Positions 3,767 to 63,700 of a stretch of 64,000 nt of DNA are shown piece after piece (the stretch's first letter is position 1; the number at the start of each line of letters is the position of its first letter). The notes under the pieces were generated by a model. That model searched no databases. It had not been told where the DNA came from and was given only the letters and a program-made list of their open reading frames with translations. The position numbers and the translations under genes are program-made. The DNA lies in IMG/VR virus record IMGVR_UViG_3300038465_000091, positions 1 to 64,000 of that record. One strand, 5' to 3'.

Positions 3767-6394
3767 TTATCCCATACCCTCGCCGCTACCTTCTGGACCT
3801 TCGTCATCCATTTCGGCCTCAATCGCGTTCAGGTCGAGACCCTTCGTGATGCGCTTGCCGAGATCGGTGTTGGTCATGAGCCAGTCACCCACGGAGTTGT
3901 AGATGTTGCTCAAAAGCTCGTTAAACTTCGAGTCCTTGACGGTGAACATCGCGTCTTCTAGTTCTCGCTTCGCATCCTCTGGATCGATATCTAAGAACTC
4001 GTAGATAATATCCACTGGCAACGATCCCTTACTATATAAATTGAAAAGCATATCGTAAATATCGCCTTGATCGCGAAGCGCCATGCGACTAAAGGAGATT
4101 TTGGGATATATCCAGCGGGGACGGCCATACTTGTCCATCTCGTAATATCCGCGTTTTTGGCTGTAAGGTTTGAAAATCTGCTCCTCGATAACGTATGTCA
4201 AGAGATCACGGAACTGGGCATAGGACGTTTCCATCAATTGCAGTTGCACGTGGTTGCCTGAGTACATGCCCTCACCAATGAGGATTTCAGGCGACAGGCC
4301 AAGACCGATTGCCAAGTCGGAGTTCGTGTGCTGCCACTCAGCGTCGAGCGAGAGCAGACGACCTTCGGAACCAATCTCATCCCATCTACATTCGTAATTG
4401 ACCACGACGGAATAATCGGGATCGGCGATAGCTTCGTCGATGTGGGCGCGTAAGGCAATAACTTCATTCGCTGGAATGTCAGGGGCTACAATCAAACGCT
4501 TTGGCGTCATGTTACGGGATGCCAACGTGCTCTGCACCTGACGCAGCTTCTCGCGGTAGATAACCGTGCGGATGCAGCGTTGCAGGATCGAGCGGCCATG
4601 CAGTTCGTAGCCGCTCTTCTTGCGGGCGAAGTGGATGACGTAAGAGCCTTGGAACGGGTCGTTGTTCAGCGGAATCTTGCCTTCCGTCTGAATCACGTCC
4701 TTCACTTGGTTCGGGACATCAGGATCATCCATGTAGGCTTGCTTCTGAGCCTCGGGTGGTTTGTAGTAGATCGTCGGACCATCCACCATCGTGCCCTCGT
4801 TGGTGATCTCGATCTGCTCAGGCGGAAGAATCTGAATGCGATCAGGTCCCTCGTAATCCTTATTCTCGATGTGGCTGAAGAGTTCCAGTTCTTCGCGCTT
4901 CTTCTCACGAATTTCCTTCAATTCTTCGAGCAGTTCTTTCTTCTTTTCGAGCAACTTGAGGAGGTGCTTCATTTCCATCAACTCACGCTGTGCCGAAATC
5001 GTGGCACCCATGGCGATAGCGTCCTTCACGCCCCCAGCGGCATCAGCGGGAGTAATCGGACCACCTCCACCGCCGCCTCCACCACCCATTGGGGCACCGC
5101 CGCCCATACCTTCAACGTCGCCAAGACCGCCCTCACCTAACGGGGCACCTTCGCCGCCTGCCGCTGGGTCACCAGCAGCGGGGTCGCCCGCAGGGGCGTC
5201 TGCGCCCGGAGGCGTACCGCCCCCAGCATCACCCGTAGGTGGTGCCGCAGCGGGTGCGGCCGGAGCGGGTGGTTGAGCAACTTTGGACATTTCGGCTAAG
5301 ATTTGAAGCGGGTAAGTATCGTCACCTTTTTCGTTACGGATAAGCTTCGCCAGCTTGTCGTTAGTCTCCGAAGCCAAAATCATCTTGGCGAGTTTCTTCG
5401 GGGCAATGCCTATGACCTTGGCAAACTTACGAGCACCCTTGTTGAGTTCTTTACGGGTCGCCTCGATCTTAACCGCGACTTTGGCAAGGTCTTTGATAAT
5501 GCTGTCGGCCCCGAAATCGAAATCAATGCCCGCAGCCTTGAGTTCATCAAACACTGAAGCGCGTTTCTTGATCCACGAAGAACGCTTCTCAGGTTGGAGG
5601 TATTCCAAAATCTTATCCGCCGTACCGCCTTCGGGTGGGTGGAAAGCTCCATCTCTGCTACCCGCTTCGGTGCTGTCGCCGCCACGTTTGCCTTCCTTTT
5701 CAAGAATTTCCTTGGCTGCCGAGCATGGTTCAATGTCTTCGGGGTCTTCGATGAATAGGAAGGTCTCTCCAATGCACCAGTACTCTCTGGCCGCATCGAT
5801 GATGACTTGAAACAGGCGGGTGCGGTTCATAAACCGCTGGAAATCGTCGTACACATAATCGGCGTACTCTTCGGACGAGCACTTCGGTTTCTCTGCCGTC
5901 ATCTTACTGACGGGGAGTTCCGTGTGCATATCGATTGCGCGACCGACGATTGGGTCACGATCATACGCCAGACGATAGAAACGAAGTTCTTCTGCACGGG
6001 ACGCAGGAAGCTCAAGGGCATCAACTGGAAACTCGTAAGAGTAGTAGCCGATGTTATTCGAGTCTTGGATATCGGCAGCGCCCAAACCGCCGTCACTGAA
6101 AAGACCAGCAGCCGTTTTAGCCGCCTCGTACATGCCCCAGCCAGAGTTTGGGTTGGTGCTTACGGTGCCGCTACGTGCCGCGCCTTGGATAATACGGAGC
6201 TTGTTCATCGCCGAATCTTCGACGATCTCGCCCTTATTGTTCATCTGCGTGTACTTGCCAGCCGATGCGAATTCCTTGTTGCCTACTTTGGCAACCTTCC
6301 GCTTTACCATGGACGGTGAGATGCGCGTATTTGCGCCTCGCTGACGGGTAGTAACCCGCTTACCTTGACCGTCGTCTGCTGTCTTATTTGCCAT
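3767..6394 (-). CDS. Probable portal protein with a large internal insertion
   Basis: 875 aa. YRLAYDRDPIVGRAIDMHTELP and HFARKKSGYELHGRSILQR segments resemble large-phage portal proteins (recognised from memory, not searched). Confidence 0.55.
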   Translation of the reverse strand: MANKTADDGQGKRVTTRQRGANTRISPSMVKRKVAKVGNKEFASAGKYTQMNNKGEIVEDSAMNKLRIIQGAARSGTVSTNPNSGWGMYEAAKTAAGLFSDGGLGAADIQDSNNIGYYSYEFPVDALELPASRAEELRFYRLAYDRDPIVGRAIDMHTELPVSKMTAEKPKCSSEEYADYVYDDFQRFMNRTRLFQVIIDAAREYWCIGETFLFIEDPEDIEPCSAAKEILEKEGKRGGDSTEAGSRDGAFHPPEGGTADKILEYLQPEKRSSWIKKRASVFDELKAAGIDFDFGADSIIKDLAKVAVKIEATRKELNKGARKFAKVIGIAPKKLAKMILASETNDKLAKLIRNEKGDDTYPLQILAEMSKVAQPPAPAAPAAAPPTGDAGGGTPPGADAPAGDPAAGDPAAGGEGAPLGEGGLGDVEGMGGGAPMGGGGGGGGGPITPADAAGGVKDAIAMGATISAQRELMEMKHLLKLLEKKKELLEELKEIREKKREELELFSHIENKDYEGPDRIQILPPEQIEITNEGTMVDGPTIYYKPPEAQKQAYMDDPDVPNQVKDVIQTEGKIPLNNDPFQGSYVIHFARKKSGYELHGRSILQRCIRTVIYREKLRQVQSTLASRNMTPKRLIVAPDIPANEVIALRAHIDEAIADPDYSVVVNYECRWDEIGSEGRLLSLDAEWQHTNSDLAIGLGLSPEILIGEGMYSGNHVQLQLMETSYAQFRDLLTYVIEEQIFKPYSQKRGYYEMDKYGRPRWIYPKISFSRMALRDQGDIYDMLFNLYSKGSLPVDIIYEFLDIDPEDAKRELEDAMFTVKDSKFNELLSNIYNSVGDWLMTNTDLGKRITKGLDLNAIEAEMDDEGPEGSGEGMG

Positions 6395-14059: not shown

Positions 14060-14135
14060 TGGTGGGAAGGGGGAGAATCGAACTCCCATCTCCTGTTTTT
14101 CAGACAGGCGCTAAGTCCACATCAGCTACCGACCC
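14060..14135 (-). tRNA. tRNA-Phe(GAA)
   Basis: Cloverleaf; anticodon arm CCTGT-CTGAAAA-ACAGG; encoded CCA; two acceptor-stem mismatches. Confidence 0.85.
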
Positions 14136-14154
14136 ATTATGATAGGTGGAATTT

Positions 14155-14231
14155 TGGTGGGAAGGGAGGGATTTGAACCCCCGACGCCAGCCTCTTCAGG
14201 GCTGCGCTCTACCGGGCTGAGCTACCGACCC
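14155..14231 (-). tRNA. tRNA-Phe(GAA)
   Basis: CAGCC-CTGAAGA-GGCTG; encoded CCA; same acceptor mismatches as the neighbouring copy. Confidence 0.87.
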
Positions 14232-14605
14232 ACATGATTACAGGCCCCCGCCCATGACGGCGGGGATGGTAAACAAGTCGAGGATGCGGTAGATGCGGTT
14301 CATAGTTTTAACCTACTGAGTAATCGAAGGACGGGCGGTCAACCGTAGTCAACCCCCGTCCCTCGCGGTAATGCCAGCCTGAAGCCAAAAGGCTCCAGTT
14401 TCCCCTGACAGGGCGAGCGATTCGTAACCGTGAGGTGTCAGCCTCAGAGGTCTTTATCGCCCCTTGTAACTGGCAATTAGAAAAAACCAGCGTCGGGTGG
14501 GACCTCCTAGCTGGCGCAGTCGATGCTTTGTCCCACGGTACTTGAGGAAGGCGTTCTAAACCTGTGCCATTGTCTCGGCTCGGTCATTCTGGCCCCTCCC
14601 CAAAC

Positions 14606-14854
14606 TTAAAATCTTTTCTTTGCTAATTGAACCTTGCGGTTCCGAATCTGCCGCACGCCCTCGGCGCACTGGCAAGCTTTCTGCAAGGCTAAACACGTTC
14701 CACAAAAGGATTCGGAAATCAAAATACTGCTGTTGATTCCCTCTTTGAAGTACGGATTGCAGCTATACTCCATGTTGCACGGTTCCAACTTAGTGCCTTT
14801 CTGATCCGCGTGGTTTTTCACGTTGTTCAGAAAAATACAAGTATCACAACCCAT
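14606..14854 (-). CDS. Possible small Cys-rich hypothetical protein
   Basis: 82-aa ORF with CxxC pairs; no strong RBS seen. Confidence 0.35.
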   Translation of the reverse strand: MGCDTCIFLNNVKNHADQKGTKLEPCNMEYSCNPYFKEGINSSILISESFCGTCLALQKACQCAEGVRQIRNRKVQLAKKRF

Positions 14855-14990
14855 CTTTTCTCTCTTTCAAAGCGTCGGCGGGGCTTTCGCCCCGCCGTTG
14901 GTCGGGGCCACTTGGTTTACGTCCAAGAACGGGGGCGAGACGGCGAACCGTTTACCCTCCACCACTCGGTTTACGTCCGAGAACGTGAAC

Positions 14991-15290
14991 TTATCCGCAG
15001 ATTTCAGGCCCGCAGCTTTCGGCGTTACCCGTGCTCTCGTTGGGCTCGTACACTTTAGCTGCGTAAACGTACTCACCTTCGGCGAAAGGTCCTGCCGAAG
15101 CATTGACCAGCATGTACCCCAGTTTAGCCAATGTGTCGGCGTTTGTCAAGAGGCGCATTTTATTGGTCGTCTGACCGTAATGCGAAGCTTCAACTTCCAA
15201 CACTGGGCGACCCTTTGTATCTGTCGTAACGGCGAATTGCACTCCACCGCCCCCGATCTCCAAAAACACTTCATTCAAAGTCTCGCCCAT
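14991..15290 (-). CDS. Hypothetical protein
   Basis: SD AAAGGA 4 nt before ATG; protein-like composition. Confidence 0.6.
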   Translation of the reverse strand: MGETLNEVFLEIGGGGVQFAVTTDTKGRPVLEVEASHYGQTTNKMRLLTNADTLAKLGYMLVNASAGPFAEGEYVYAAKVYEPNESTGNAESCGPEICG

Positions 15291-15299
15291 ACGATCCTT

Positions 15300-16160
15300 T
15301 CAAAATGCTATTGGGACCTAGCTGCGACTGGCTACGCAGGGTCGTCGGCTCCCGCCGAAGGTCTTGCCTATCAAGCGTCCCAACAGCAATCTTCGCCCCC
15401 ACTGTTCTCGCGGTATTACCGTCCGATTGGATACGGAAGCGTTGCCCCAATTCTTGGGTTACCCGTTCAGGGGGAGCACCCACCCATCAATCTCAAAACT
15501 ATGCGGGCACGAGCTTGGTTAGGCTCCGACCTTCTGCCGTAGTTGCAACGGCCTCCCGATCTTGCTTAGTCGCCGCACAAACTTTCCCAGTCGGCAGGGA
15601 CTCCCGATTCTCCACCCTGCATGACCCCAGTCCCATTTAAGGGACACAGTTGAGCCTGTGCTCGAAGACTGTGCTGACCGCTTGGGTCTCCACGTTCGGA
15701 ATCCCGTCGCAGCGGGAACCCCTTCCAAACGCTTTAGCGTCTCTATTTCTGGATCGTGTCTATTTCCGCCACGACTGGAAAAACGATTGTGGCGGGGGAT
15801 AGCAGCCGTAAAACACGGCCCCACTAGGCTCACGCCCACGTTCTTTTGGTAAATCTCCCTTGAAGAACGATTGCTCATATCTCGTATCGTAGCTCGAACA
15901 GGAGCAGGACACAGAGACACCGCCACAAAATTACTACTCCCATCCGAGGCAGTTCGAACTGCTTGTCGGCGTCGGCTGTAACCAGCGAACGAGCGATTTG
16001 AGCTTACCTTTCGGCAGAGGCTTGCGGAGTTCGTTAAAAGCGGCCTGAGAAGCGATTTCACAGGTTTCACGCCGCACGCTTTTACGTTATGGCGGTTCCC
16101 CGAACAATGACTCCACTCAGGCACAAAGTCAAAGTCCAATGAGGACCTGCTAATCACAGC
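15300..16160 (-). ncRNA. Candidate large structured ncRNA (GOLLD/ROOL size class)
   Basis: About 850 nt with no credible RBS-linked ORF, many short hairpins, inside a tRNA array; family not verified. Confidence 0.35.
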
Positions 16161-16260
16161 CGCTATTACGCGGCAACCTTACTTGTTGTCAGGCGGCTGT
16201 CGGCTTTGGCCCTGAGGATTTACACAGGAGCGACTCACCTATCATGACCTGACAACAAAA

Positions 16261-16340
16261 TGGTTGCAGAGGCTTGGAGTCGCACCAAGTACACCGTTCG
16301 GCTTATGAGGCCGATGAGCCGCAGTTGCTCGATCCCTGCT
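16261..16340 (-). tRNA. Atypical tRNA-Met(CAT)
   Basis: TCGGC-CTCATAA-GCCGA arm; T-loop TGCGACT; encoded CCA; irregular acceptor stem. Confidence 0.6.
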
Positions 16341-16686
16341 TCAAACTTAACAATCCCGCGTGAACCTTGCGATGACAATTCTCACACAGAACCACGCACT
16401 TTGCAATCTCAGCTAAGACTCGTTCTCGACTGAATTGCCTTGCGATTGCGTATGCTATCGTAAATTCTTTCTTGTCCTTGTCCACGTGATGAAATGAAAG
16501 GCAGCAATAAGCCGTTTCAGGACACAACTTGCAGGACAATTTCAAAGACTGGAAGAGCTTTCGTATCTCCTCCTTGTACCGTTTCTTTCGCTGGCTAACC
16601 AGCCGCTTGTGCTCCGCTCTGTACACGGGATCGTTGTTGTAACGATCTCGAAGGTACTTTGCGTGTTTTGCAGGGGTAGTAGGCAC
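16303..16686 (-). CDS. HNH endonuclease (tRNA-array family)
   Basis: CKLC...LSFHH...KCVVLCENCHRKVH. GTG start 6 nt after TGTGGTATACT. Confidence 0.88.
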   Translation of the reverse strand: MPTTPAKHAKYLRDRYNNDPVYRAEHKRLVSQRKKRYKEEIRKLFQSLKLSCKLCPETAYCCLSFHHVDKDKKEFTIAYAIARQFSRERVLAEIAKCVVLCENCHRKVHAGLLSLKQGSSNCGSSAS

Positions 16687-16776
16687 CCTACAAGTATACC
16701 ACAGCCGCAACTCGATCCCCGGGAGACGCTAGGCGACTCCACTTGCAAGGCGCGTGCGCCTCACTGGGGAAACCTT

Positions 16777-16853
<77 letters not shown>

Positions 16854-17162
16854 TCAAAATTATACAGCGGCCTGAGCCCACATCCACCTTCTACGGGGCT
16901 AACCCCCTCGGGCGACTGCGATGCATCCCGAACCCAAGCCGACTTCCCTACCGAGGCAATGGATGAATGCCCCTTCACTAAAATGGGCTGAACGAATGGT
17001 CAGGGTTTTTTACTGTTTAAGGTCGCCCGCCAGCCCGCTGTTGGCCGACCCCCTTTACTGCCATTTACACAGCAAGGGTAGCCTGTCCTCCGTGGTCTAC
17101 CAGCGTACCACGATACTCGACAAGGTACAACTATCTGGGAATCCTTGTCAATCGCCGTGCTA

Positions 17163-17495
17163 CTAAACTTCTCGCAACATGCTCTGCAATTGCTCGGCCA
17201 ACTCTTTCGCCTGATCGCGGCTCACATAAACCGTGCCCGAATCCCCGCAATCCATGCGGATGCCGATCACGTTGGGCTCGTCGCCATCAGCCATCAACCA
17301 AATGTGGTCGGTTGCGTTGCCGTTCAAGCGCAATGTCTTATCCAGTGCAATAGCCATACGGCCTCCAGAAAGAAAAAACCTCGGCAAGTGCACTCCCCCG
17401 TTTCGACCCGCTGGGTACTTATTCCCCAGAAGGGAGAGGCACGACGACCAAACAGAGTCGGGCACCACGTCGGCTGTCATCCGGGAGTCGGGCAT
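17163..17495 (-). CDS. Hypothetical protein
   Basis: ORF; an internal start MAIALD with SD GGAGG is also possible. Confidence 0.5.
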   Translation of the reverse strand: MPDSRMTADVVPDSVWSSCLSLLGNKYPAGRNGGVHLPRFFLSGGRMAIALDKTLRLNGNATDHIWLMADGDEPNVIGIRMDCGDSGTVYVSRDQAKELAEQLQSMLREV

Positions 17496-17652
17496 ATCCG
17501 CAAAGCCCCAACTCCCTTGAACCTGCTTGTTAGCGTCCCGCAGCGGAGCGGGTGCCGAGGCACATCAGGGCATGGTCGCAACTGTCGCCAAATTGAGCCG
17601 CCTGTAATTGCCGGCGGCACCCTCATTACAATAATACGCTAGTTTCAAAAGA

Positions 17653-17967
17653 TTATCTACCTTCAACTTTATCGCGCCGACGAAATTCAGCTTGCGTCCA
17701 CGATTGGCGAAGCGCCTTACGGCGTTTATGAGCACAAGAAAAATACTTTGCCGAGTGGCACTGACGACAGCCGCAGTTGAGGTTGAACTTTGCGTAGCGA
17801 CCCCACTCCGTGGGTGTGTACCACCCCATTTGCTGCTGGTAAAACGGAGAACCCTCGTGCGGCTCCTCGTTGTAGTGGGTCCAAATTTTCGTCGCGATGA
17901 ACTTGCGACGGGCGATTACACGTTCGCGCTGGTGACGACGTTCGTCACGAGACGTTGGATGAGACAT
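17653..17967 (-). CDS. Basic hypothetical protein with CGCRQC motif
   Basis: SD GGAG upstream of ATG 17967. Confidence 0.6.
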   Translation of the reverse strand: MSHPTSRDERRHQRERVIARRKFIATKIWTHYNEEPHEGSPFYQQQMGWYTPTEWGRYAKFNLNCGCRQCHSAKYFSCAHKRRKALRQSWTQAEFRRRDKVEGR

Positions 17968-18307
17968 GGCTTTCACTCCCCGACCGCTCACACCTTATGC
18001 GGTATGTGCGGTCTTGCTAGGGTTAGTAGCCATCTGCTCGTCCTCCTGTGAATTGAATTGTCGGGTATCCGATACTGTGTTTGGGCAGTTAGTAGCCAGA
18101 TGCTTTTGGCCCTATAGCCTCGGAAGGGTCCGCAGACTCCCGACTTCCCTAAATTTCGGCGGCGTTTCAGCCGCCAGCACTGCATAACCAAAACCGAGCG
18201 CGGTGCACCGCCTCGGCTGGATATTCAAAGAACGGGTGCGTCTGTTCTGCACAAACTTGTGGGGCTTTCCCCATCCGGCTCGAAGCCTACGGGTCTTAAA
18301 CCTACGC

Positions 18308-18383
18308 TTTAGCGTGGTGGGATTCGAACCCACGTCCTTCCCCGTCAATAGGGGTTGCCGATCCGCTGGGCGTCACGCTAAAG
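18308..18383 (-). tRNA. Degenerate tRNA-like gene (loop TATTGAC, nominal anticodon TTG)
   Basis: Perfect acceptor TAGCGTG/CACGCTA and GTGGG-TTCGAAT-CCCAC T-arm; A33; no encoded CCA. Confidence 0.5.
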
Positions 18384-18511
18384 AACCTTTGGTGGATGGT
18401 TCGCTTGGGTCGCTTTCGCGTCTTTCCGCCTTTTGGCTCCCAACATCCCCGCCCCTGCTGTTAACACGACTGTACGTGACTGCTTACGCTATCAGGGCAT
18501 CCACCAAAAAT

Positions 18512-18589
18512 TGGTGCCGGATGCTGGGATCGAACCAGCGGCCTTCGGCTTATGAGACCGACGCTCTGAGCCAACTGAGCTAATCCGGC
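18512..18589 (-). tRNA. tRNA-Met or Ile2 (CAT)
   Basis: Canonical cloverleaf; TCGGT-CTCATAA-GCCGA; CCA. Met versus Ile2 cannot be resolved by eye. Confidence 0.9.
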
Positions 18590-18648
18590 TAAACGTCGGG
18601 GAATCGGTGACCGACTCCCCAGTTCCTCCCACACGTGGTGGGTGAATC

Positions 18649-18816
18649 TTAAAAATTCAACTTACTCGCCAGAATCTCAGGTCGAATTACAACTTTCGAC
18701 CAATCTGGTTGTTCGAACCATTCGGGGTGCTCGTAATAGTTACGGAGATGACTATGGATTGGAAGACCTTCATTATCTAGTATGCCAAATCCCGTCTCAT
18801 CAGTATCTTGCGGCAT
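18649..18816 (-). CDS. Small hypothetical protein (55 aa)
   Basis: Below the ORF-track cutoff; SD AAGGAG; begins MPQDTDETGFGILDNEGLP. Confidence 0.6.
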   Translation of the reverse strand: MPQDTDETGFGILDNEGLPIHSHLRNYYEHPEWFEQPDWSKVVIRPEILASKLNF

Positions 18817-18825
18817 TCAATCTCC

Positions 18826-19176
18826 TTAAAAGTCTGGAAAGAACGCGGTTGCTTTCTTTGCTTTGGGTGCCGCCTCAGCGGTATCTTCCGAAAGCTCGAT
18901 CTGCCCCTGTTCTCTCACGACTTCATCATACGGCTTACTGTTAATCTGAGCAAGCTCTGTTTCAAAACCACTATACAAGTTGCTGCCCGATGCCAGCTTG
19001 GTGAGGTGAGCGACCTCGCGTTCAGCGTCGGCCTTCTCTTCCAAAGTCACTGGGCTCTCGGCCAACCACACGTCGATGAACGATAGCTCGCCCTTCTCAG
19101 CGGCTTTCTTCCACGGGTCATAGGTCTTTACGTCAACCTTCTCGTGACCCTCTACGCCTACACGAATCTTTGACAT
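18826..19176 (-). CDS. Hypothetical protein
   Basis: Start reassigned to MSKIRVG behind TATTAG and SD GAGG. Confidence 0.65.
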   Translation of the reverse strand: MSKIRVGVEGHEKVDVKTYDPWKKAAEKGELSFIDVWLAESPVTLEEKADAEREVAHLTKLASGSNLYSGFETELAQINSKPYDEVVREQGQIELSEDTAEAAPKAKKATAFFPDF

Positions 19177-19279
19177 GGCGGTCCTCTGTCTAATAGGTTT
19201 GATATTCACCAAGTGCCTATAGGACGATACTGCTTTCGTTGGAAAAGAGCCGCGAGTTTTCGCAAAAACCACATAAATT

Positions 19280-19354
19280 TGGTCGGGGAGGCGAGATTCG
19301 AACTCGCGATCCCATGCTCCCGAAGCATGTGCGTTACCGCTACGCTACTCCCCG
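19280..19354 (-). tRNA. tRNA-Pro(CGG)
   Basis: CATGC-TTCGGGA-GCATG; CGGGGAG acceptor; CCA. Confidence 0.92.
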
Positions 19355-20026: not shown

Positions 20027-20116
20027 TGGTCAGGATGAGAGGATTTGAACCTCCAAGGTCATAAAGACACCTGCATCCGAGGCAGGACGGCTGCCAAGTT
20101 ACCGTTCTACACCCTG
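20027..20116 (-). tRNA. tRNA-Pro(CGG) with enlarged variable arm
   Basis: CCTGC-CTCGGAT-GCAGG; ~15-nt variable region; CCA. Confidence 0.85.
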
Positions 20117-20129
20117 ACATTGTAAAATT

Positions 20130-20216
20130 TGGTCGGGGTGGGGAGATTCGAACTCCCAGTGATCTTATCTCCCGCTTCCAAAGCGGGTCGGCTCCCAACT
20201 ACCGATTTACACCCCG
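20130..20216 (-). tRNA. tRNA-Pro(TGG) with enlarged variable region
   Basis: CCCGC-TTTGGAA-GCGGG; ~13-nt variable region; CCA. Confidence 0.87.
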
Positions 20217-20342
20217 ATTATGCGTTTTTCCGCCTAAAAGCGTTTTATACGGAAAACCGCCTAAAGCACAAAATCGAGGCAAATGTCTTGGAATTCAGTT
20301 GCTTACAGCGCCCCGATGCCTAGCAGCACGGGGTTGAGGCTC

Positions 20343-20414
20343 TTAGAGCACTTCACCCCCGCGCACGGTAGGCGTGCACGGTCGAAACATCGGGGTTGGT
20401 CGCATTGTGTTCAT
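20343..20414 (-). promoter_or_regulatory. Leader peptide ORF of the Pro/Met/Phe tRNA array (MNTMRPTPMFRPCTPTVRGGEVL)
   Basis: 23 codons with 4 Pro, 3 Met, 1 Phe (also 4 Thr, 3 Arg), lying between the promoter and the first tRNA-Pro. Confidence 0.6.
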
Positions 20415-20534
20415 AAAGTCGTCCCGATTCGTGCCCAGAGCCGTAGCTAAACTACAGATGCTCACGAATCGTAAGATTGGTGTGGGGCACGAGTTTCCAC
20501 CGTTCTGTAATCTGCGCCCTTCCCAATCTCTACT

Positions 20535-20568
20535 ATAATACCATGGAAGTTTGAATTTTAGTTAGGAA
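20535..20568 (-). promoter_or_regulatory. Phage promoter TTCCTAAC-N20-TATTAT
   Basis: Fixed-spacing motif shared with six other loci. Confidence 0.7.
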
Positions 20569-20758
20569 AATCGAAATTTATTTCCAAGGCACGGGGTCAT
20601 GGGCGTTCAGTTGTTCGCGGCGGTCCATAAGCTCCTGCCTTCGCGGTTCGTGTATTTCGGCTGCACGCCATCTACGATCAGCGGCTCCCGCGTGCCCTCC
20701 ACAACGACGTTCTTCCGACCCGTCCAAACTCTAGTCTTGGCGGATTTCTTCACGGCTT

Positions 20759-23921: not shown

Positions 23922-24007
23922 TGGTGCCGCCGACAGGGATCGAACCTGCATGGCTGTAAACCACTGGATTCTGAGTCCAGCCTGTCTGCCAATTCCAGCA
24001 CGGCGGC
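23922..24007 (-). tRNA. tRNA-Leu(CAG)
   Basis: Class II; loop CTCAGAA; CCA. Confidence 0.95.
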
Positions 24008-24014
24008 AAAATTT

Positions 24015-24099
24015 TGGTGTGGCCGGAGGGACTTGAACCCTCACACCTTTCGGCATCACCCCCTCAAGATGACGTGTCTGCCAATTCCACCACGGCCAC
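24015..24099 (-). tRNA. tRNA-Leu(GAG)
   Basis: Class II; loop TTGAGGG; CCA. Confidence 0.93.
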
Positions 24100-24383: not shown

Positions 24384-24394
24384 ATATTCTCCAC

Positions 24395-24425
24395 AAAAAT
24401 CAAAAGCCGCCTTTTCAGGCGGCTT
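24395..24425 (-). terminator. Attenuator terminator upstream of the Tyr/Leu tRNA array
   Basis: AAGCCGCC-TGAAAA-GGCGGCTT followed by TTGATTTTT, located between the leader ORF and the first tRNA. Confidence 0.9.
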
Positions 24426-24448
24426 GTTCAAATTCGGGTGTAATAACG

Positions 24449-24532
24449 TTACCCTTTGAACACACCGCCCCGACGATAGCTAAGGTACAAGCTATACAGT
24501 CGCAGTGACGGTGATAGGGTTACGTGGGTCAT
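24449..24532 (-). promoter_or_regulatory. Leader peptide ORF of the Leu/Tyr tRNA array (MTHVTLSPSLRLYSLYLSYRRGGVFKG)
   Basis: 27 aa with Leu CTA/CTG/CTG/TTG/CTT and Tyr TAT/TAC/TAT clustered; its 3' end forms the antiterminator arm. Confidence 0.85.
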
Positions 24533-24547
24533 AATGTTCACTTCTAC

Positions 24548-24581
24548 ATAATACCACGGTAGTCAAGATTTTCGCTAGGAA
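24548..24581 (-). promoter_or_regulatory. Phage promoter TTCCTAGC-N20-TATTAT
   Basis: Fixed-spacing motif immediately upstream of the leader ORF. Confidence 0.75.
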
Positions 24582-61734: not shown

Positions 61735-61745
61735 TTAAAATATTC

Positions 61746-62158
61746 GTGTTGAACCTGTAGCCGGGATTTTGTCCGCCAGCTTACGCCAGTTGGACGACCA
61801 TTCCTCTAGGCGTTGCATCGCTACAACGCTCAAGCACCCTACCCGCTGATTACCCGCCTCTTGCGAAGCGAACGGATCGAACACAATCCTGCTCAGCCTA
61901 TTTGGGCTTGCTGCACGTGGAGATTGCTCGTTTCACCCGAACTGAATCGGCTCGTCTCTGTAGCTCTAATCGTCAACACCCTTGCGGGTGCCGCCCAGCC
62001 GTTAGCTGGCACGCTGTTCTTTGCAGTCCCGAACTTCCTCCCCTGCGCTCAACGCCGGACTTGGTTGGGTATTTCACATCAACACTGCCGATGCGAATCT
62101 TACACGCTTCCAAGCACAGGACGTATATCTACGCAGCAGCGGTCGTCCAATTCAACAC
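61746..62158 (-). ncRNA. rnpB: RNase P RNA (bacterial type A-like)
   Basis: P1 GTGTTGAA/TTCAACAC; P2 ACGACCG/TGGTCGT; P4 strands GAGGAAGTTCGGG and ACAAAATCCCGGCTA; GGGTGAAACG and GAGCAA core motifs. Confidence 0.9.
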
Positions 62159-63169: not shown

Positions 63170-63180
63170 AAATTTACCGC

Positions 63181-63214
63181 AAAAACAAAAAGGACGCCTT
63201 TTTAGGGGCGTCCT
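63181..63214 (-). terminator. Attenuator terminator upstream of the Val/Ala/Gly/Asp/Glu/Cys array
   Basis: AGGACGCC-CCTAAAAA-GGCGTCCT followed by TTTTGTTTTT, about 11 nt before tRNA-Val. Confidence 0.92.
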
Positions 63215-63238
63215 CGGAATTCGTTGGTTTTAGGCTAT

Positions 63239-63385
63239 TTAGCCACCCCAACCATCCAAGGACACCATATCTCCTACCGGCGCCGCGTCAGCGGCGACAG
63301 TACCGCGTTCGGCTGTACAAGCCGACAGGACCACGCCTGCACAGACGACCGTCACGACAACACCGTCTTGGAGAATGGAGTTCAT
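63239..63385 (-). promoter_or_regulatory. Leader peptide ORF (MNSILQDGVVVTVVCAGVVLSACTAERGTVAADAAPVGDMVSLDGWGG)
   Basis: 48 aa: 10 Val, 7 Ala, 7 Gly, 4 Asp, 2 Cys, 1 Glu; its 3' end forms a 12-bp antiterminator arm; TATTGT element upstream. Confidence 0.85.
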
Positions 63386-63700
63386 AAGCGTCTCTATTTA
63401 CAATACTCGGTATTCAGGAAACTTGCAACAACTATTTTTCAGAAAAGTTTGAGGGCGCAACCACGGACGAACCGTGTGATCTTCTGTCTTGCTACGGCTA
63501 TCAGCCGCCTTCCGAACTGCGCCCCGATGAAAATACATCGGCTACAGTAACCCTGCACGTTGAACTGGTGCCAGCTAGAGTTCGGGACCGTTGCCACCGT
63601 TGCACCTGAGGTACACCGGATTATGCGGGTCATGACTCCCGTGACAGTGGGTTTTAGCCCTAGCCAGCCGTGCACAGTATGCAGCCGAATCTCAAAATTT

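What the first reader, a model, noticed from the sequence alone, without database searches (positions are those of the whole stretch)
20221..20568. Pro/Met/Phe leader peptide with alternative helices but no classic U-tract
The leader MNTMRPTPMFRPCTPTVRGGEVL (Pro CCA, CCG, CCG, CCT; 3 Met; Phe) lies between a TTCCTAAC-N20-TATTAT promoter and the array of 3 tRNA-Pro, 3 CAT tRNAs and 2 tRNA-Phe. CCCCGATG at the Pro-Met codons can pair with downstream CATCGGGG, competing with the hairpin CCCCGTGC/GCA-T-CGGGG. GGGGTG near the stop can pair with CAACCCC. No U-tract follows, so termination may be Rho-dependent or occur at the weaker GCG(G)TTTT/AAAACGC-TTTT hairpin further on. Four Thr and three Arg codons have no matching tRNA that I could identify, so this case is weaker.
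Basis: partly seen in the sequence, partly recalled or inferred. Interest (0 to 1): 0.72.

Follow-up and report, generated by a model that had tools for sequence, protein, structure and literature searches.

The report
Leader-peptide switch before phage tRNAs
A jumbo phage from peat puts a short translated leader with competing RNA hairpins in front of its proline/methionine/phenylalanine tRNA genes, one of at least four such units whose peptides mirror the tRNAs downstream, which suggests that phages tune tRNA supply by sensing how well the matching codons are read.

Summary
An extended -10 promoter (TGGTATTAT, 20543-20535) is followed by a 23-codon ORF (20414-20343) and competing helices, then three tRNA-Pro, three CAU tRNAs, one tRNA-Gln and two tRNA-Phe.

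Eight distinct relatives from peat metagenomes keep the ORF. Indels inside it are multiples of three, and the stop codon always sits in the loop of a stem that is rewritten with compensatory changes. Three mutually exclusive helices, arranged like the trp attenuator, pair in 100% of cells in all nine aligned sequences.

The strongest support is context. The same phage has three sibling leaders (Tyr/Leu, Val/Ala/Gly/Asp/Cys/Glu, Ile/Thr/Gln). Each mirrors its own tRNA array and ends in a textbook terminator. The cultured phages Tunturi 5 and XacN1 have analogues.

This unit is the odd one. The helix in the terminator position has no U-tract. In two deletion relatives the switch instead captures the 5' strand of tRNA-Pro.

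Metatranscriptome contigs support the promoter and some read-through, but not termination or translation. I found no published report. Verdict: a new variant of ribosome-mediated attenuation, with the output step unresolved.

The parts
20529..20583 (-). Conserved promoter block: an A/T-rich upstream part, a TTTTCCTA motif and the extended -10 TGGTATTAT (20543-20535).
   Evidence: The 21-mer occurs exactly twice in the genome, both times ahead of tRNA arrays, and is shared with the Tyr/Leu leader promoter. RNA contigs begin at 20517 and 20516 in two runs, with almost no depth upstream.
20475..20528 (-). 5'UTR module 1, a hairpin. It is a lineage-specific insertion between the promoter and the ATG.
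   Evidence: Present in L005, L004, L015 and L019 but absent in L012, L017 and L018, where the ATG follows the -10 by 6-9 nt. Unique in the genome.
20415..20474 (-). 5'UTR module 2, a 9-bp stem with an inner hairpin, followed by an unstructured run of about 19 nt that carries the ATG.
   Evidence: Shared with L004, L015 and L019 with wobble or compensatory changes, and absent in L005. Fold.
20343..20414 (-). Leader ORF of 23 codons plus TAA. The conserved part is M-x-x-MRPTPMFRPC.
   Evidence: The ORF is 23 or 24 codons in all 9 sequences, with two independent +3 indels.
20388..20396 (-). S0, ACCCCGATG (codons 7-9). It can pair with S4.
   Evidence: It closes the minimum-energy fold of the window sequence. 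The middle base varies C/U/A in relatives, so this helix is only partly conserved.
20374..20381 (-). S1, CCGTGCAC (codons 12-14), the 5' strand of helix A.
   Evidence: 72 of 72 cells paired with S2, with wobble and compensatory changes.
20356..20366 (-). S2, GTGCGCGGGGG (codons 17-20). It pairs either with S1 or with S3.
   Evidence: Both alternatives are 100% paired in all 9 sequences.
20337..20353 (-). Variable inner stem-loop with the stop codon in its apical loop.
   Evidence: There are six different stem sequences among relatives. All are paired, and the stop is always in the loop.
20326..20333 (-). S3, CCCCGTGC. It pairs either with S2 (helix 1) or with S4 (helix 2).
   Evidence: Alignment column 93 covaries with both of its alternative partners.
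20311..20319 (-). S4, GCATCGGGG, the 3' strand of helix 2. It resembles the 5' acceptor strand of tRNA-Pro and has no U-tract after it.
   Evidence: In L004 and L005 this position is the tRNA-Pro 5' end itself.
20262..20281 (-). S5, TGCCTCGAT (20281-20273), complementary to S4, followed by the U-run TTTGTGCTTT.
   Evidence: The S4:S5 helix is predicted in the window sequence and in L015, L017, L018, L012 and L011. The U-run is present in four of these. It forms in models only when a ribosome is stalled at codons 10 or 12.
20221..20262 (-).
   Evidence: It is replaced by other hairpins in L012, L011, L017 and L018. A similar 17-mer precedes tRNA-Thr at genome position 132867.
20130..20216 (-). 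tRNA-Pro(UGG) with a long variable arm, the first gene of the array.
20027..20116 (-). tRNA-Pro(CGG) with a long variable arm.
   Evidence: Only 20.3 bits in Rfam and missed by ARAGORN here. Its homologues are called tRNA-Pro(CGG) in relatives, and the acceptor stem shows compensatory changes.
14060..19354 (-). The rest of the array: Pro(CGG), Met(CAU) x3, Gln and Phe x2, interspersed with small ORFs.
   Evidence: The same Pro-Met-Phe order is found in relatives.
24394..24556 (-). Sibling unit: promoter, Tyr/Leu-rich leader ORF (24532-24449) and canonical terminator (24425-24394) ahead of tRNA-Tyr and Leu x5.
63180..63405 (-). Sibling unit: promoter, Val/Ala/Gly/Asp/Cys/Glu-rich leader ORF (63385-63239) and canonical terminator (63213-63180) ahead of the Val...Glu array.

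Best explanation
The region is the 5' leader of the phage's Pro/Met/Phe tRNA transcription unit, built as a ribosome-sensing switch.

Transcription. Host-type RNA polymerase starts about 7-20 nt after the TGGTATTAT box.

The helices. The RNA carries a 23-codon ORF whose 3' half overlaps three mutually exclusive helices arranged like the trp attenuator:
- S1:S2, which lies inside the ORF.
- S2:S3, which encloses a small stem-loop with the stop codon in its loop.
- S3:S4.

Inferred working:
- A ribosome slowed at Met9, Phe10 or Pro12 covers S1. S2 then locks S3 away and S4 stays free.
- A ribosome that runs to the stop codon covers S2, so S3 pairs with S4.

The sibling leaders. In the three sibling leaders of the same phage, the helix equivalent to S3:S4 is a canonical terminator. 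There, good decoding shuts the tRNA array down and poor decoding opens it, which is negative feedback on tRNA supply.

This unit. S3:S4 has lost or never had the U-tract, so the output step is uncertain. The options are:
(a) inefficient or factor-assisted termination after S3:S4;
(b) termination at the S4:S5 helix plus U-run, which would invert the response;
(c) control of the availability of the tRNA-Pro 5' acceptor strand, and hence of tRNA folding and RNase P processing. This is what models predict for the natural deletion variants L004 and L005.

Shown versus inferred. Shown: the sequence features, their conservation and covariation, the family context, and transcription from the promoter. 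Inferred: translation of the ORF, stalling, and every output.
For: Conservation of the ORF:
- Nine sequences, eight of them distinct relatives.
- ORF of 23 or 24 codons, start always AUGAA.
- Two independent +3 indels inside the ORF, against spacings of 9-12 nt (not multiples of three) between the stop and S3.
- The stop codon is always in the loop of a stem that has six different, fully paired sequences.

Helices:
- S1:S2 and S3:S4 pair in 144 of 144 cells; slid controls give 25-65%.
- The alternative S2:S3 pairs in 72 of 72 cells.
- One column (U/C) covaries with both of its alternative partners.

Ribosome-blocking folds:
- S3 is sequestered at 0.90-1.00 with the A site at codons 9-13.
- It is sequestered at only 0.30 with the ribosome at the stop.
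- The Tyr/Leu sibling shows the same polarity clearly, and the other two siblings more weakly.

Family context:
- The promoter block is shared.
- Each of four leaders in this genome and two in Tunturi 5 is most enriched for its own array's amino acids: 6 of 6 on the diagonal, P from 0.044 down to 1e-5.
- Two siblings rank first of 1562 small ORFs in the genome.
- The Tyr/Leu leader and its terminator are conserved in L016.
- XacN1 has a Lys/Tyr-rich 13-mer ahead of tRNA-Lys, Lys, Tyr, P = 1.4e-5.

Other support:
- In relatives the leader always precedes Pro x4-5, then Met, then Phe x2.
- In L012, L017 and L018 the ATG follows the -10 by 6-9 nt. Leaderless genes are common in this phage.
- RNA contigs from four peat metatranscriptomes cover the leader. 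Their 5' limits are 20517 and 20516, there is almost no depth upstream, and one contig runs into tRNA-Pro.
- In L005 the predicted fold has the tRNA-Pro cloverleaf only when a ribosome sits at codons 10 or 12. Otherwise S3 holds the tRNA 5' strand.
Against: - No canonical terminator is found in 20217-20568. Only 2 of the 12 bases after S3:S4 are U.
- The only U-run follows S4:S5, which models form when the ribosome is stalled. Taken at face value this gives the biologically odd response of stall leading to termination.
- The codon bias of this peptide alone is weak: P = 0.04-0.06 for the whole peptide.
- Synonymous sites in codons 4-13 are almost invariant. Conservation there could therefore be purely at the RNA level.
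- In the window phage a 114-nt structured 5'UTR without a good Shine-Dalgarno sequence precedes the ATG. Translation may be poor.
- Open frames of this length are common in this G+C-rich stretch; frame +1 is also open for about 36 codons.
- Internal promoters and ORFs lie between the tRNAs, so the leader may control only the proximal Pro genes.
- The RNA evidence comes from assembled contigs that may include DNA. Contig ends fall in the hypervariable stem, where assemblies break anyway.
Confidence: 0.65

Rival explanations
1. It is a non-coding structured 5' leader of the tRNA precursor, for example a folding or processing guide for RNase P or RNase E, or a stable leader RNA. The ORF is fortuitous.
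For: - Near-total invariance of synonymous positions in codons 4-13.
- Strong folding, z = -4.5.
- Open frames are common here.
- There is no conserved Shine-Dalgarno sequence.
- The phage carries its own RNase P RNA.
- Leader depth exceeds downstream depth in 3 of 4 RNA runs.
Against: - Indels inside the ORF occur only in threes, while those just after it do not.
- The ATG is kept at the transcription start in leaderless relatives.
- The stop stays in the loop through six rewritten stems.
- Sibling leaders have peptide composition that tracks their arrays.
Confidence: 0.13
2. It is a decayed relic of tRNA-Pro duplications. S2/S3 and S4/S5 would be old acceptor-stem strands with a U-rich trailer, and the element no longer regulates anything in this phage.
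For: - S4 is nearly identical to the tRNA-Pro 5' end, and S3 and S5 resemble its 3' acceptor strand.
- The L004/L005 form differs by exactly the stretch between the two ATCGGGG repeats.
- tRNAs in this phage are followed by A/U-rich trailers.
- The U-tract after S3:S4 is missing.
Against: - Neither Rfam nor ARAGORN sees a tRNA here.
- Compensatory rewriting of the inner stem and the maintenance of three alternative helices indicate ongoing selection.
- The C-terminal R-G-G codons and the stop-in-loop layout match the sibling attenuators rather than a tRNA.
Confidence: 0.1
3. It is a reverse attenuator. S4:S5 plus the U-run is the true terminator, so stalling at Met, Phe or Pro codons terminates transcription and smooth translation lets it through.
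For: - S4:S5 is conserved in six lineages and is followed by a U-run in four.
- In models it forms with a ribosome at codons 10 or 12, but not with one at the stop or with none.
Against: - The polarity is opposite to the three siblings, and the resulting feedback makes no obvious sense.
- The loop is 27-30 nt, so the terminator scan did not call it.
- One RNA contig crosses the U-run and another reaches the tRNA.
- The deletion variants lack it altogether.
Confidence: 0.15
4. It is an ordinary small-protein gene whose 23-residue product acts in trans. The hairpins would be incidental.
For: The N-terminal 13 residues are conserved.
Against: - The C-terminal third changes freely as long as the RNA pairing is kept.
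- Nucleotide-level invariance exceeds what a protein needs.
- Position and architecture are shared with leaders of unrelated sequence.
Confidence: 0.03

Closest known systems
Leader-peptide transcription attenuators of amino-acid operons (trp, his, leu, thr, ilv, pheA)
   Same: A short ORF with regulatory codons. Three successive, mutually exclusive helices. The ribosome's position chooses between them. The stop codon lies near the second segment.
   Different: - The regulated genes are tRNAs, not biosynthetic enzymes.
- The peptide mixes codons for several amino acids that match a mixed tRNA array.
- This unit lacks the U-tract after the last helix.
- In relatives the mRNA is leaderless.
Sibling leaders in the same phage (24556-24394, 63405-63180, genome 131643-131807) and in Tunturiibacter phage Tunturi 5 (gp308 and an unannotated ORF)
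   Same: The same promoter block within this phage. An AUGAA start. Gly-rich last codons that form the 5' strand of the helix enclosing the stop. Peptide composition that mirrors the array.
   Different: The siblings end in textbook terminators (7-9 bp G+C-rich stem, short loop, UUUUGNUUUU). The Pro/Met/Phe unit does not, and it carries the extra S4:S5 stage and inserted 5'UTR hairpins.
Leaderless poly-Cys short ORFs that act as Cys-responsive attenuators in mycobacteria (bioRxiv 10.1101/834739, listed)
   Same: Leaderless short ORFs rich in one kind of codon regulate the genes downstream in the operon.
   Different: Those regulate protein-coding operons of the cell. I read only the title and abstract.
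T-box leaders
   Same: They sense tRNA status and regulate by alternative terminator and antiterminator helices.
   Different: T-boxes bind uncharged tRNA directly, have no ORF, and regulate aminoacyl-tRNA synthetase and amino-acid genes. No T-box match was found here.

Membership tests
Ribosome-mediated (leader-peptide) transcription attenuator, trp/his type | A short ORF directly upstream of the regulated genes, enriched in codons that relate to their function. | tested here: met
   The ORF at 20414-20343 is conserved in 8 relatives. Pro, Met or Phe make up 7 of 22 residues overall and 6 of the 12 conserved residues. The empirical rank is 7 of 1562 for the conserved part but only 92 of 1562 for the whole peptide.
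Ribosome-mediated (leader-peptide) transcription attenuator, trp/his type | The ORF is translated. | not testable with these tools
   There is only indirect support: indels in threes, an ATG at the transcription start in leaderless relatives, and a fixed stop position.
Ribosome-mediated (leader-peptide) transcription attenuator, trp/his type | Successive, mutually exclusive helices that overlap the end of the ORF. | tested here: met
   S1:S2, S2:S3 and S3:S4 are each 100% paired in 9 sequences, with a column that covaries with both partners. Ribosome-blocking folds switch between them.
Ribosome-mediated (leader-peptide) transcription attenuator, trp/his type | The last helix is an intrinsic terminator (G+C-rich stem followed by a U-tract). 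| tested here: not met
   Only 2 of the 12 bases after S3:S4 are U. The terminator scan finds none in 20217-20568 but does find the sibling's at 24425-24404. A long-loop S4:S5 helix with a U-run exists, but it has the wrong polarity.
Ribosome-mediated (leader-peptide) transcription attenuator, trp/his type | Regulated premature 3' ends. | tested here: inconclusive
   Metatranscriptome contigs show more depth over the leader than downstream in 3 of 4 runs, and read-through in one. Contig ends are not RNA ends.
Phage tRNA-array leader family (defined here) | A shared promoter block and position at the head of a tRNA array. | tested here: met
Phage tRNA-array leader family (defined here) | Peptide composition is best matched to its own array. 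| tested here: met
   The diagonal is the maximum in 6 of 6 rows. This member has the weakest P value of the six (0.044), though its enrichment ratio of 2.04 is mid-range.
Phage tRNA-array leader family (defined here) | The stop codon is enclosed by the helix that sequesters the 5' strand of the next helix. | tested here: met
T-box riboswitch, or any Rfam family | A match to a curated covariance model. | tested here: not met
   There is no match in 20221-20568 even at E up to 10.
tRNA or tRNA pseudogene | A cloverleaf detectable by ARAGORN or the Rfam tRNA model. | tested here: not met
   Only short resemblances to acceptor strands are seen.

The most novel reading that the evidence does not exclude
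Jumbo phages control their tRNA arrays with multi-codon leader peptides that test, codon by codon, whether the cell can decode exactly the codons served by the tRNAs downstream. In the Pro/Met/Phe unit the output has moved from transcription termination to capture of the tRNA-Pro 5' acceptor strand. The leader peptide would then decide whether the first tRNA can fold and be cut by RNase P. That would be a regulatory output not described for any attenuator.
Probability: 0.25. Interest if true: 0.9.

Novelty: new variant of a known kind. Interest (0 to 1): 0.8.

Why it matters
Why phages carry tRNAs, and how they set their levels, is a long-standing question that has been argued mostly from codon usage. 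Leaders whose peptides mirror the downstream tRNA set would mean that the phage measures decoding capacity directly and feeds it back on tRNA production.

This gives a concrete and testable mechanism, and a cultured system to test it in: Tunturi 5 on Tunturiibacter, and possibly XacN1 on Xanthomonas. It also extends classical attenuation to RNA genes and to mixed-codon sensors. It could bear on phage responses to host defences that deplete or cleave tRNAs; that last point is my inference.

The Pro/Met/Phe unit matters as the natural variant that lacks the terminator. It can show what else such a switch can control.

Tried and rejected
- Rfam at the gathering threshold and at E up to 10 found nothing in the leader.
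- A phage-database DNA search hit only the tRNA-Pro genes.
- IMG/VR scans with an ORF core, a degenerate ORF pattern and a tRNA-Pro pattern gave only three relevant contigs plus chance hits L008-L010.
- Equilibrium folding of the full leaders with a blocked ribosome was uninformative, because the local terminators always win. I replaced it with folds of the transcript truncated before the last strand.
- A sigma-70 consensus scan does not call the promoter, because there is no -35 box.
- A relay in which S5 would capture the tRNA 5' strand in the window phage is not supported by minimum-energy folds. The cloverleaf forms in every state.
- The small ORF ahead of tRNA-Phe 14231 is not Phe-rich, and the leaders ahead of tRNA-Ala 63775 and tRNA-Arg 129024 have no matching ORF. 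I did not count them as members.
- XacN1 ORF094, ahead of its Pro/Thr/Trp/Gln tRNAs, shows no match.
- Five literature searches and the Tunturi paper gave no report of leader peptides ahead of tRNA arrays. This covers only the held library.
- ARAGORN with intron search did not resolve the tRNA-like RNA at 19530-19355.

Full report
WHERE THE WINDOW COMES FROM

The window is the first 64 kb of a 223,506-base IMG/VR virus record, estimated 71% complete. Its G+C content is about 52%, and nearly all genes in the window lie on the minus strand. It is a jumbo phage from peat or permafrost. The whole record carries 37 predicted tRNA genes and a tmRNA, plus a bacterial type A RNase P RNA at 61741-62086. 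The only database phages with DNA similarity match through tRNA-Pro genes. One of them is the acidobacterial jumbo phage Tunturi 5, so the host is probably an acidobacterium; that is my inference.

CHECK OF THE OBSERVATION

On the minus strand, the space between a small gene ending at 20607 and tRNA-Pro(UGG) at 20216 holds the following:
- the promoter-like block, 20583-20529;
- two hairpin modules, 20528-20415;
- the ORF MNTMRPTPMFRPCTPTVRGGEVL, 20414-20343;

The stretch folds far better than shuffles, z = -4.5. No Rfam family matches it.

The promoter is better read as an extended -10 box, TGGTATTAT. The TTCCTA motif lies too far upstream to be a -35 box. The 21-mer around the box occurs exactly twice in the genome, and the second copy lies ahead of the Ile/Thr/Gln tRNA array.

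Peat metatranscriptome contigs identical to the window cover the leader:
- 20335-20517, 20375-20516, 20250-20400 and 20111-20393;
- two of them stop at 20517 and 20516;
- three runs have almost no depth over the upstream gene;
- one contig runs on into tRNA-Pro.

This fits an independent transcript starting just downstream of the box, with some read-through. These are assembled contigs, and DNA carry-over cannot be excluded.

RELATIVES

Exact and degenerate pattern scans found eight further distinct versions in IMG/VR and JGI metagenomes. In all of them the element heads an array of four or five tRNA-Pro, then tRNA-Met, then two tRNA-Phe.

The ORF is kept at 23 or 24 codons:
- The first 13 codons are almost invariant, even at synonymous sites.
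- The last third changes freely.
- The two length changes inside the ORF are both +3 and independent. The distance from the stop to the next conserved segment takes the values 9, 10, 11 and 12.
- The stop codon always lies in the apical loop of a small stem that has six different, fully paired sequences.

In L012, L017 and L018 the ATG follows the -10 box by 6-9 nt, so the mRNA would be leaderless. Many genes of this phage have that layout. The two hairpins between promoter and ATG in the window phage are therefore lineage-specific insertions. They are unique in the genome.

THE HELICES

Three successive helices cannot coexist:
- S1:S2 (20381-20374 with 20366-20359).
- S2:S3 (20364-20357 with 20333-20326).
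- S3:S4 (20333-20326 with 20319-20311).

On the nine-sequence alignment, S1:S2 plus S3:S4 form standard pairs in 144 of 144 cells. Slid controls give 25-65%. S2:S3 pairs in 72 of 72 cells. One column of S3 (U or C) changes together with both of its alternative partners. That is what a switch predicts, although the number of independent changes is small.

This is the layout of the trp attenuator. I folded the transcript as it exists before S4 is made, with 28 nt blocked around each A-site codon. S3 is sequestered with probability 0.90-1.00 when the ribosome sits at Met9 to Cys13, and only 0.30 when it sits at the stop.

FAMILY CONTEXT: THE DECISIVE EVIDENCE

Scanning upstream of every tRNA array showed three more leaders. 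Each has a promoter, a short ORF starting AUGAA, Gly-rich last codons, a stop enclosed in the helix that hides the 5' strand of the next helix, and then a textbook terminator just ahead of the first tRNA.

| Leader | Coordinates | Array it precedes |
|---|---|---|
| Tyr/Leu | 24532-24449 | tRNA-Tyr and five tRNA-Leu |
| Val/Ala/Gly/Asp/Cys/Glu | 63385-63239 | the array with exactly those tRNAs |
| Ile/Thr/Gln | genome 131665-131754 | Ile x2, Thr x3, Gln x2 |

The five Leu codons of the Tyr/Leu leader (CTA, CTG, CTG, TTG, CTT) match the four anticodons present in its array.

Enrichment for the leader's own array:

| Leader | Residues matching own array | P |
|---|---|---|
| Tyr/Leu | 8 of 26 | 0.006 |
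| Val/Ala/Gly/Asp/Cys/Glu | 31 of 47 | 4e-5 |
| Ile/Thr/Gln | 15 of 28 | 9e-6 |
| Pro/Met/Phe | 7 of 22 | 0.044 |

Against all 1562 small ORFs of the genome, the Val/Ala and Ile/Thr/Gln leaders rank first. The Tyr/Leu leader ranks seventh, and the Pro/Met/Phe leader ranks 92nd, or seventh for its conserved 13 residues. The Tyr/Leu leader and its terminator are conserved in a relative.

The design extends to cultured phages:
- In Tunturi 5, gp308 is annotated as hypothetical. It is rich in Arg, Asp, Val, Lys and Trp. It is followed by a canonical terminator and then by a Trp-Asp-Met-Lys-Val-Arg-Glu array.
- Also in Tunturi 5, an unannotated ORF rich in Gly, Ala, Thr, Gln, Pro, Phe and His precedes a Gln-Gly-Thr-Pro-His-Ala-Phe array.
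- With these two added, every one of the six leaders matches its own array best.
- In Xanthomonas phage XacN1, a 13-codon ORF with four Tyr and three Lys lies just ahead of tRNA-Lys, Lys, Tyr, P = 1.4e-5.

The Tunturi paper does not mention leaders or attenuation. Five full-text searches found no report of this arrangement.

HOW IT MOST LIKELY WORKS, AND WHAT REMAINS OPEN

For the siblings the reading is simple. A ribosome slowed at the regulatory codons leaves the first helix in place, so the terminator cannot form and the tRNAs are made. A ribosome that reaches the stop melts that helix, and the terminator forms. That is negative feedback on tRNA supply.

The Pro/Met/Phe unit has the same front end. 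Met9, Phe10 and Pro12 sit exactly where stalling has the largest modelled effect. But S3:S4 is not followed by U residues in the window phage, where only 2 of the next 12 bases are U. Only the most divergent relative, L011, has a U-rich tail, 6 of 12.

Downstream, all non-deleted relatives have a fifth segment S5 complementary to S4. In four of them it is followed by UUUUGU. In models S4:S5 forms when the ribosome is stalled, and not when it is at the stop or absent. If S4:S5 is a terminator, the response is the reverse of the siblings, which is hard to rationalise. S4 and S5 also look like the two acceptor strands of a collapsed tRNA-Pro with its usual U-rich trailer, so they may be a relic.

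The natural variants L004 and L005 lack the stretch between S4 and the tRNA, so S3 pairs directly with the tRNA-Pro 5' strand. There the predicted fold gives a complete cloverleaf only with a ribosome at codons 10 or 12. With no ribosome, or with one at the stop, the acceptor strand is held by S3. That keeps the sibling polarity, but the output is tRNA folding rather than termination.

My estimates:
- About 0.65 that the element is a working ribosome-sensing leader.
- Within that, roughly equal weight on weak or assisted termination after S3:S4, on an effect through S4:S5, and on an effect on tRNA-Pro maturation.

Translation, stalling and any regulated 3' end remain unshown.

COMPARISON WITH KNOWN SYSTEMS

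The element works like the leader-peptide attenuators of amino-acid operons. It meets their structural criteria except the terminator, so I do not file this unit as a proven transcription attenuator. It is not a T-box or any Rfam family, and it is not a detectable tRNA.

Three things are new:
- the class of regulated genes, which are tRNA arrays of phages;
- the mixed-codon peptides that mirror the array;
- in this unit, the missing terminator with a possible alternative output.

Noticed in passing
window 61741-62086 (-): A bacterial type A RNase P RNA (139 bits, full length) sits inside the Val/Ala/Gly tRNA array of a phage genome.
   Followed up: no
window 20216-20130 and 20116-20027 (-): Two tRNA-Pro genes carry long variable arms of about 13 nt, a feature normally limited to Leu, Ser and Tyr tRNAs in bacteria. 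They are conserved in relatives alongside ordinary tRNA-Pro genes.
   Followed up: partly
window 19530-19355 (-): A 176-nt tRNA-like RNA with an acceptor stem, a T arm, an ACCA end and an insertion of about 110 nt. ARAGORN does not call it even with intron search. One metatranscriptome contig joins 19530 back to 19355, a head-to-tail or circular form whose ends coincide with the expected RNase P sites.
   Followed up: partly
genome 123104-123446 and 129385-129543 (outside the window): A tmRNA gene, a tRNA with the amber-suppressor anticodon CUA, and an adjacent tRNA with a four-base anticodon CUAG. TAG may be read through late in infection. All four leader ORFs stop at TAA.
   Followed up: no
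window 24556-24394 and 63405-63180; genome 131643-131807: Three sibling leader-peptide attenuators with canonical terminators lie ahead of the Tyr/Leu, Val/Ala/Gly/Asp/Cys/Glu and Ile/Thr/Gln tRNA arrays. They are stronger cases than the one examined.
   Followed up: yes
L021 (Tunturi 5, PP885688.1) 5346-5495 and about 17700-17810; L022 (XacN1, AP018399.1) about 23990-24030: Cultured phages carry analogous leaders. Tunturi 5 has gp308 and an unannotated ORF, each with a terminator and a matching array. XacN1 has a Lys/Tyr-rich 13-codon ORF ahead of tRNA-Lys, Lys, Tyr.
   Followed up: partly
window 20528-20415 (-); L004: Hairpin modules have been inserted stepwise between promoter and leader ATG in some lineages: none in L012, L017 and L018; one in L005; two in the window phage, L015 and L019; about 190 nt more in L004. 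Module 1 ends like a tRNA 3' end (CCCCGACCA in L005).
   Followed up: partly
L020 3827-3930 and downstream: In one relative an HNH-like zinc-finger ORF is inserted directly after S4 of the leader, ahead of the tRNA-Pro genes. Similar HNH-like ORFs are scattered between the tRNAs of the window phage.
   Followed up: no
window 3763, 36479 (-); genome 141846 (+), 189382 (-): Many genes follow a TGGTATAAT or TGGTATTAT box by only 5-7 nt. Leaderless mRNAs seem to be common in this phage.
   Followed up: partly
window 14300-14232 (-): A 21-codon ORF with an internal G+C-rich hairpin lies directly ahead of the two tRNA-Phe genes. It is not Phe-rich, so I did not count it as a leader.
   Followed up: partly
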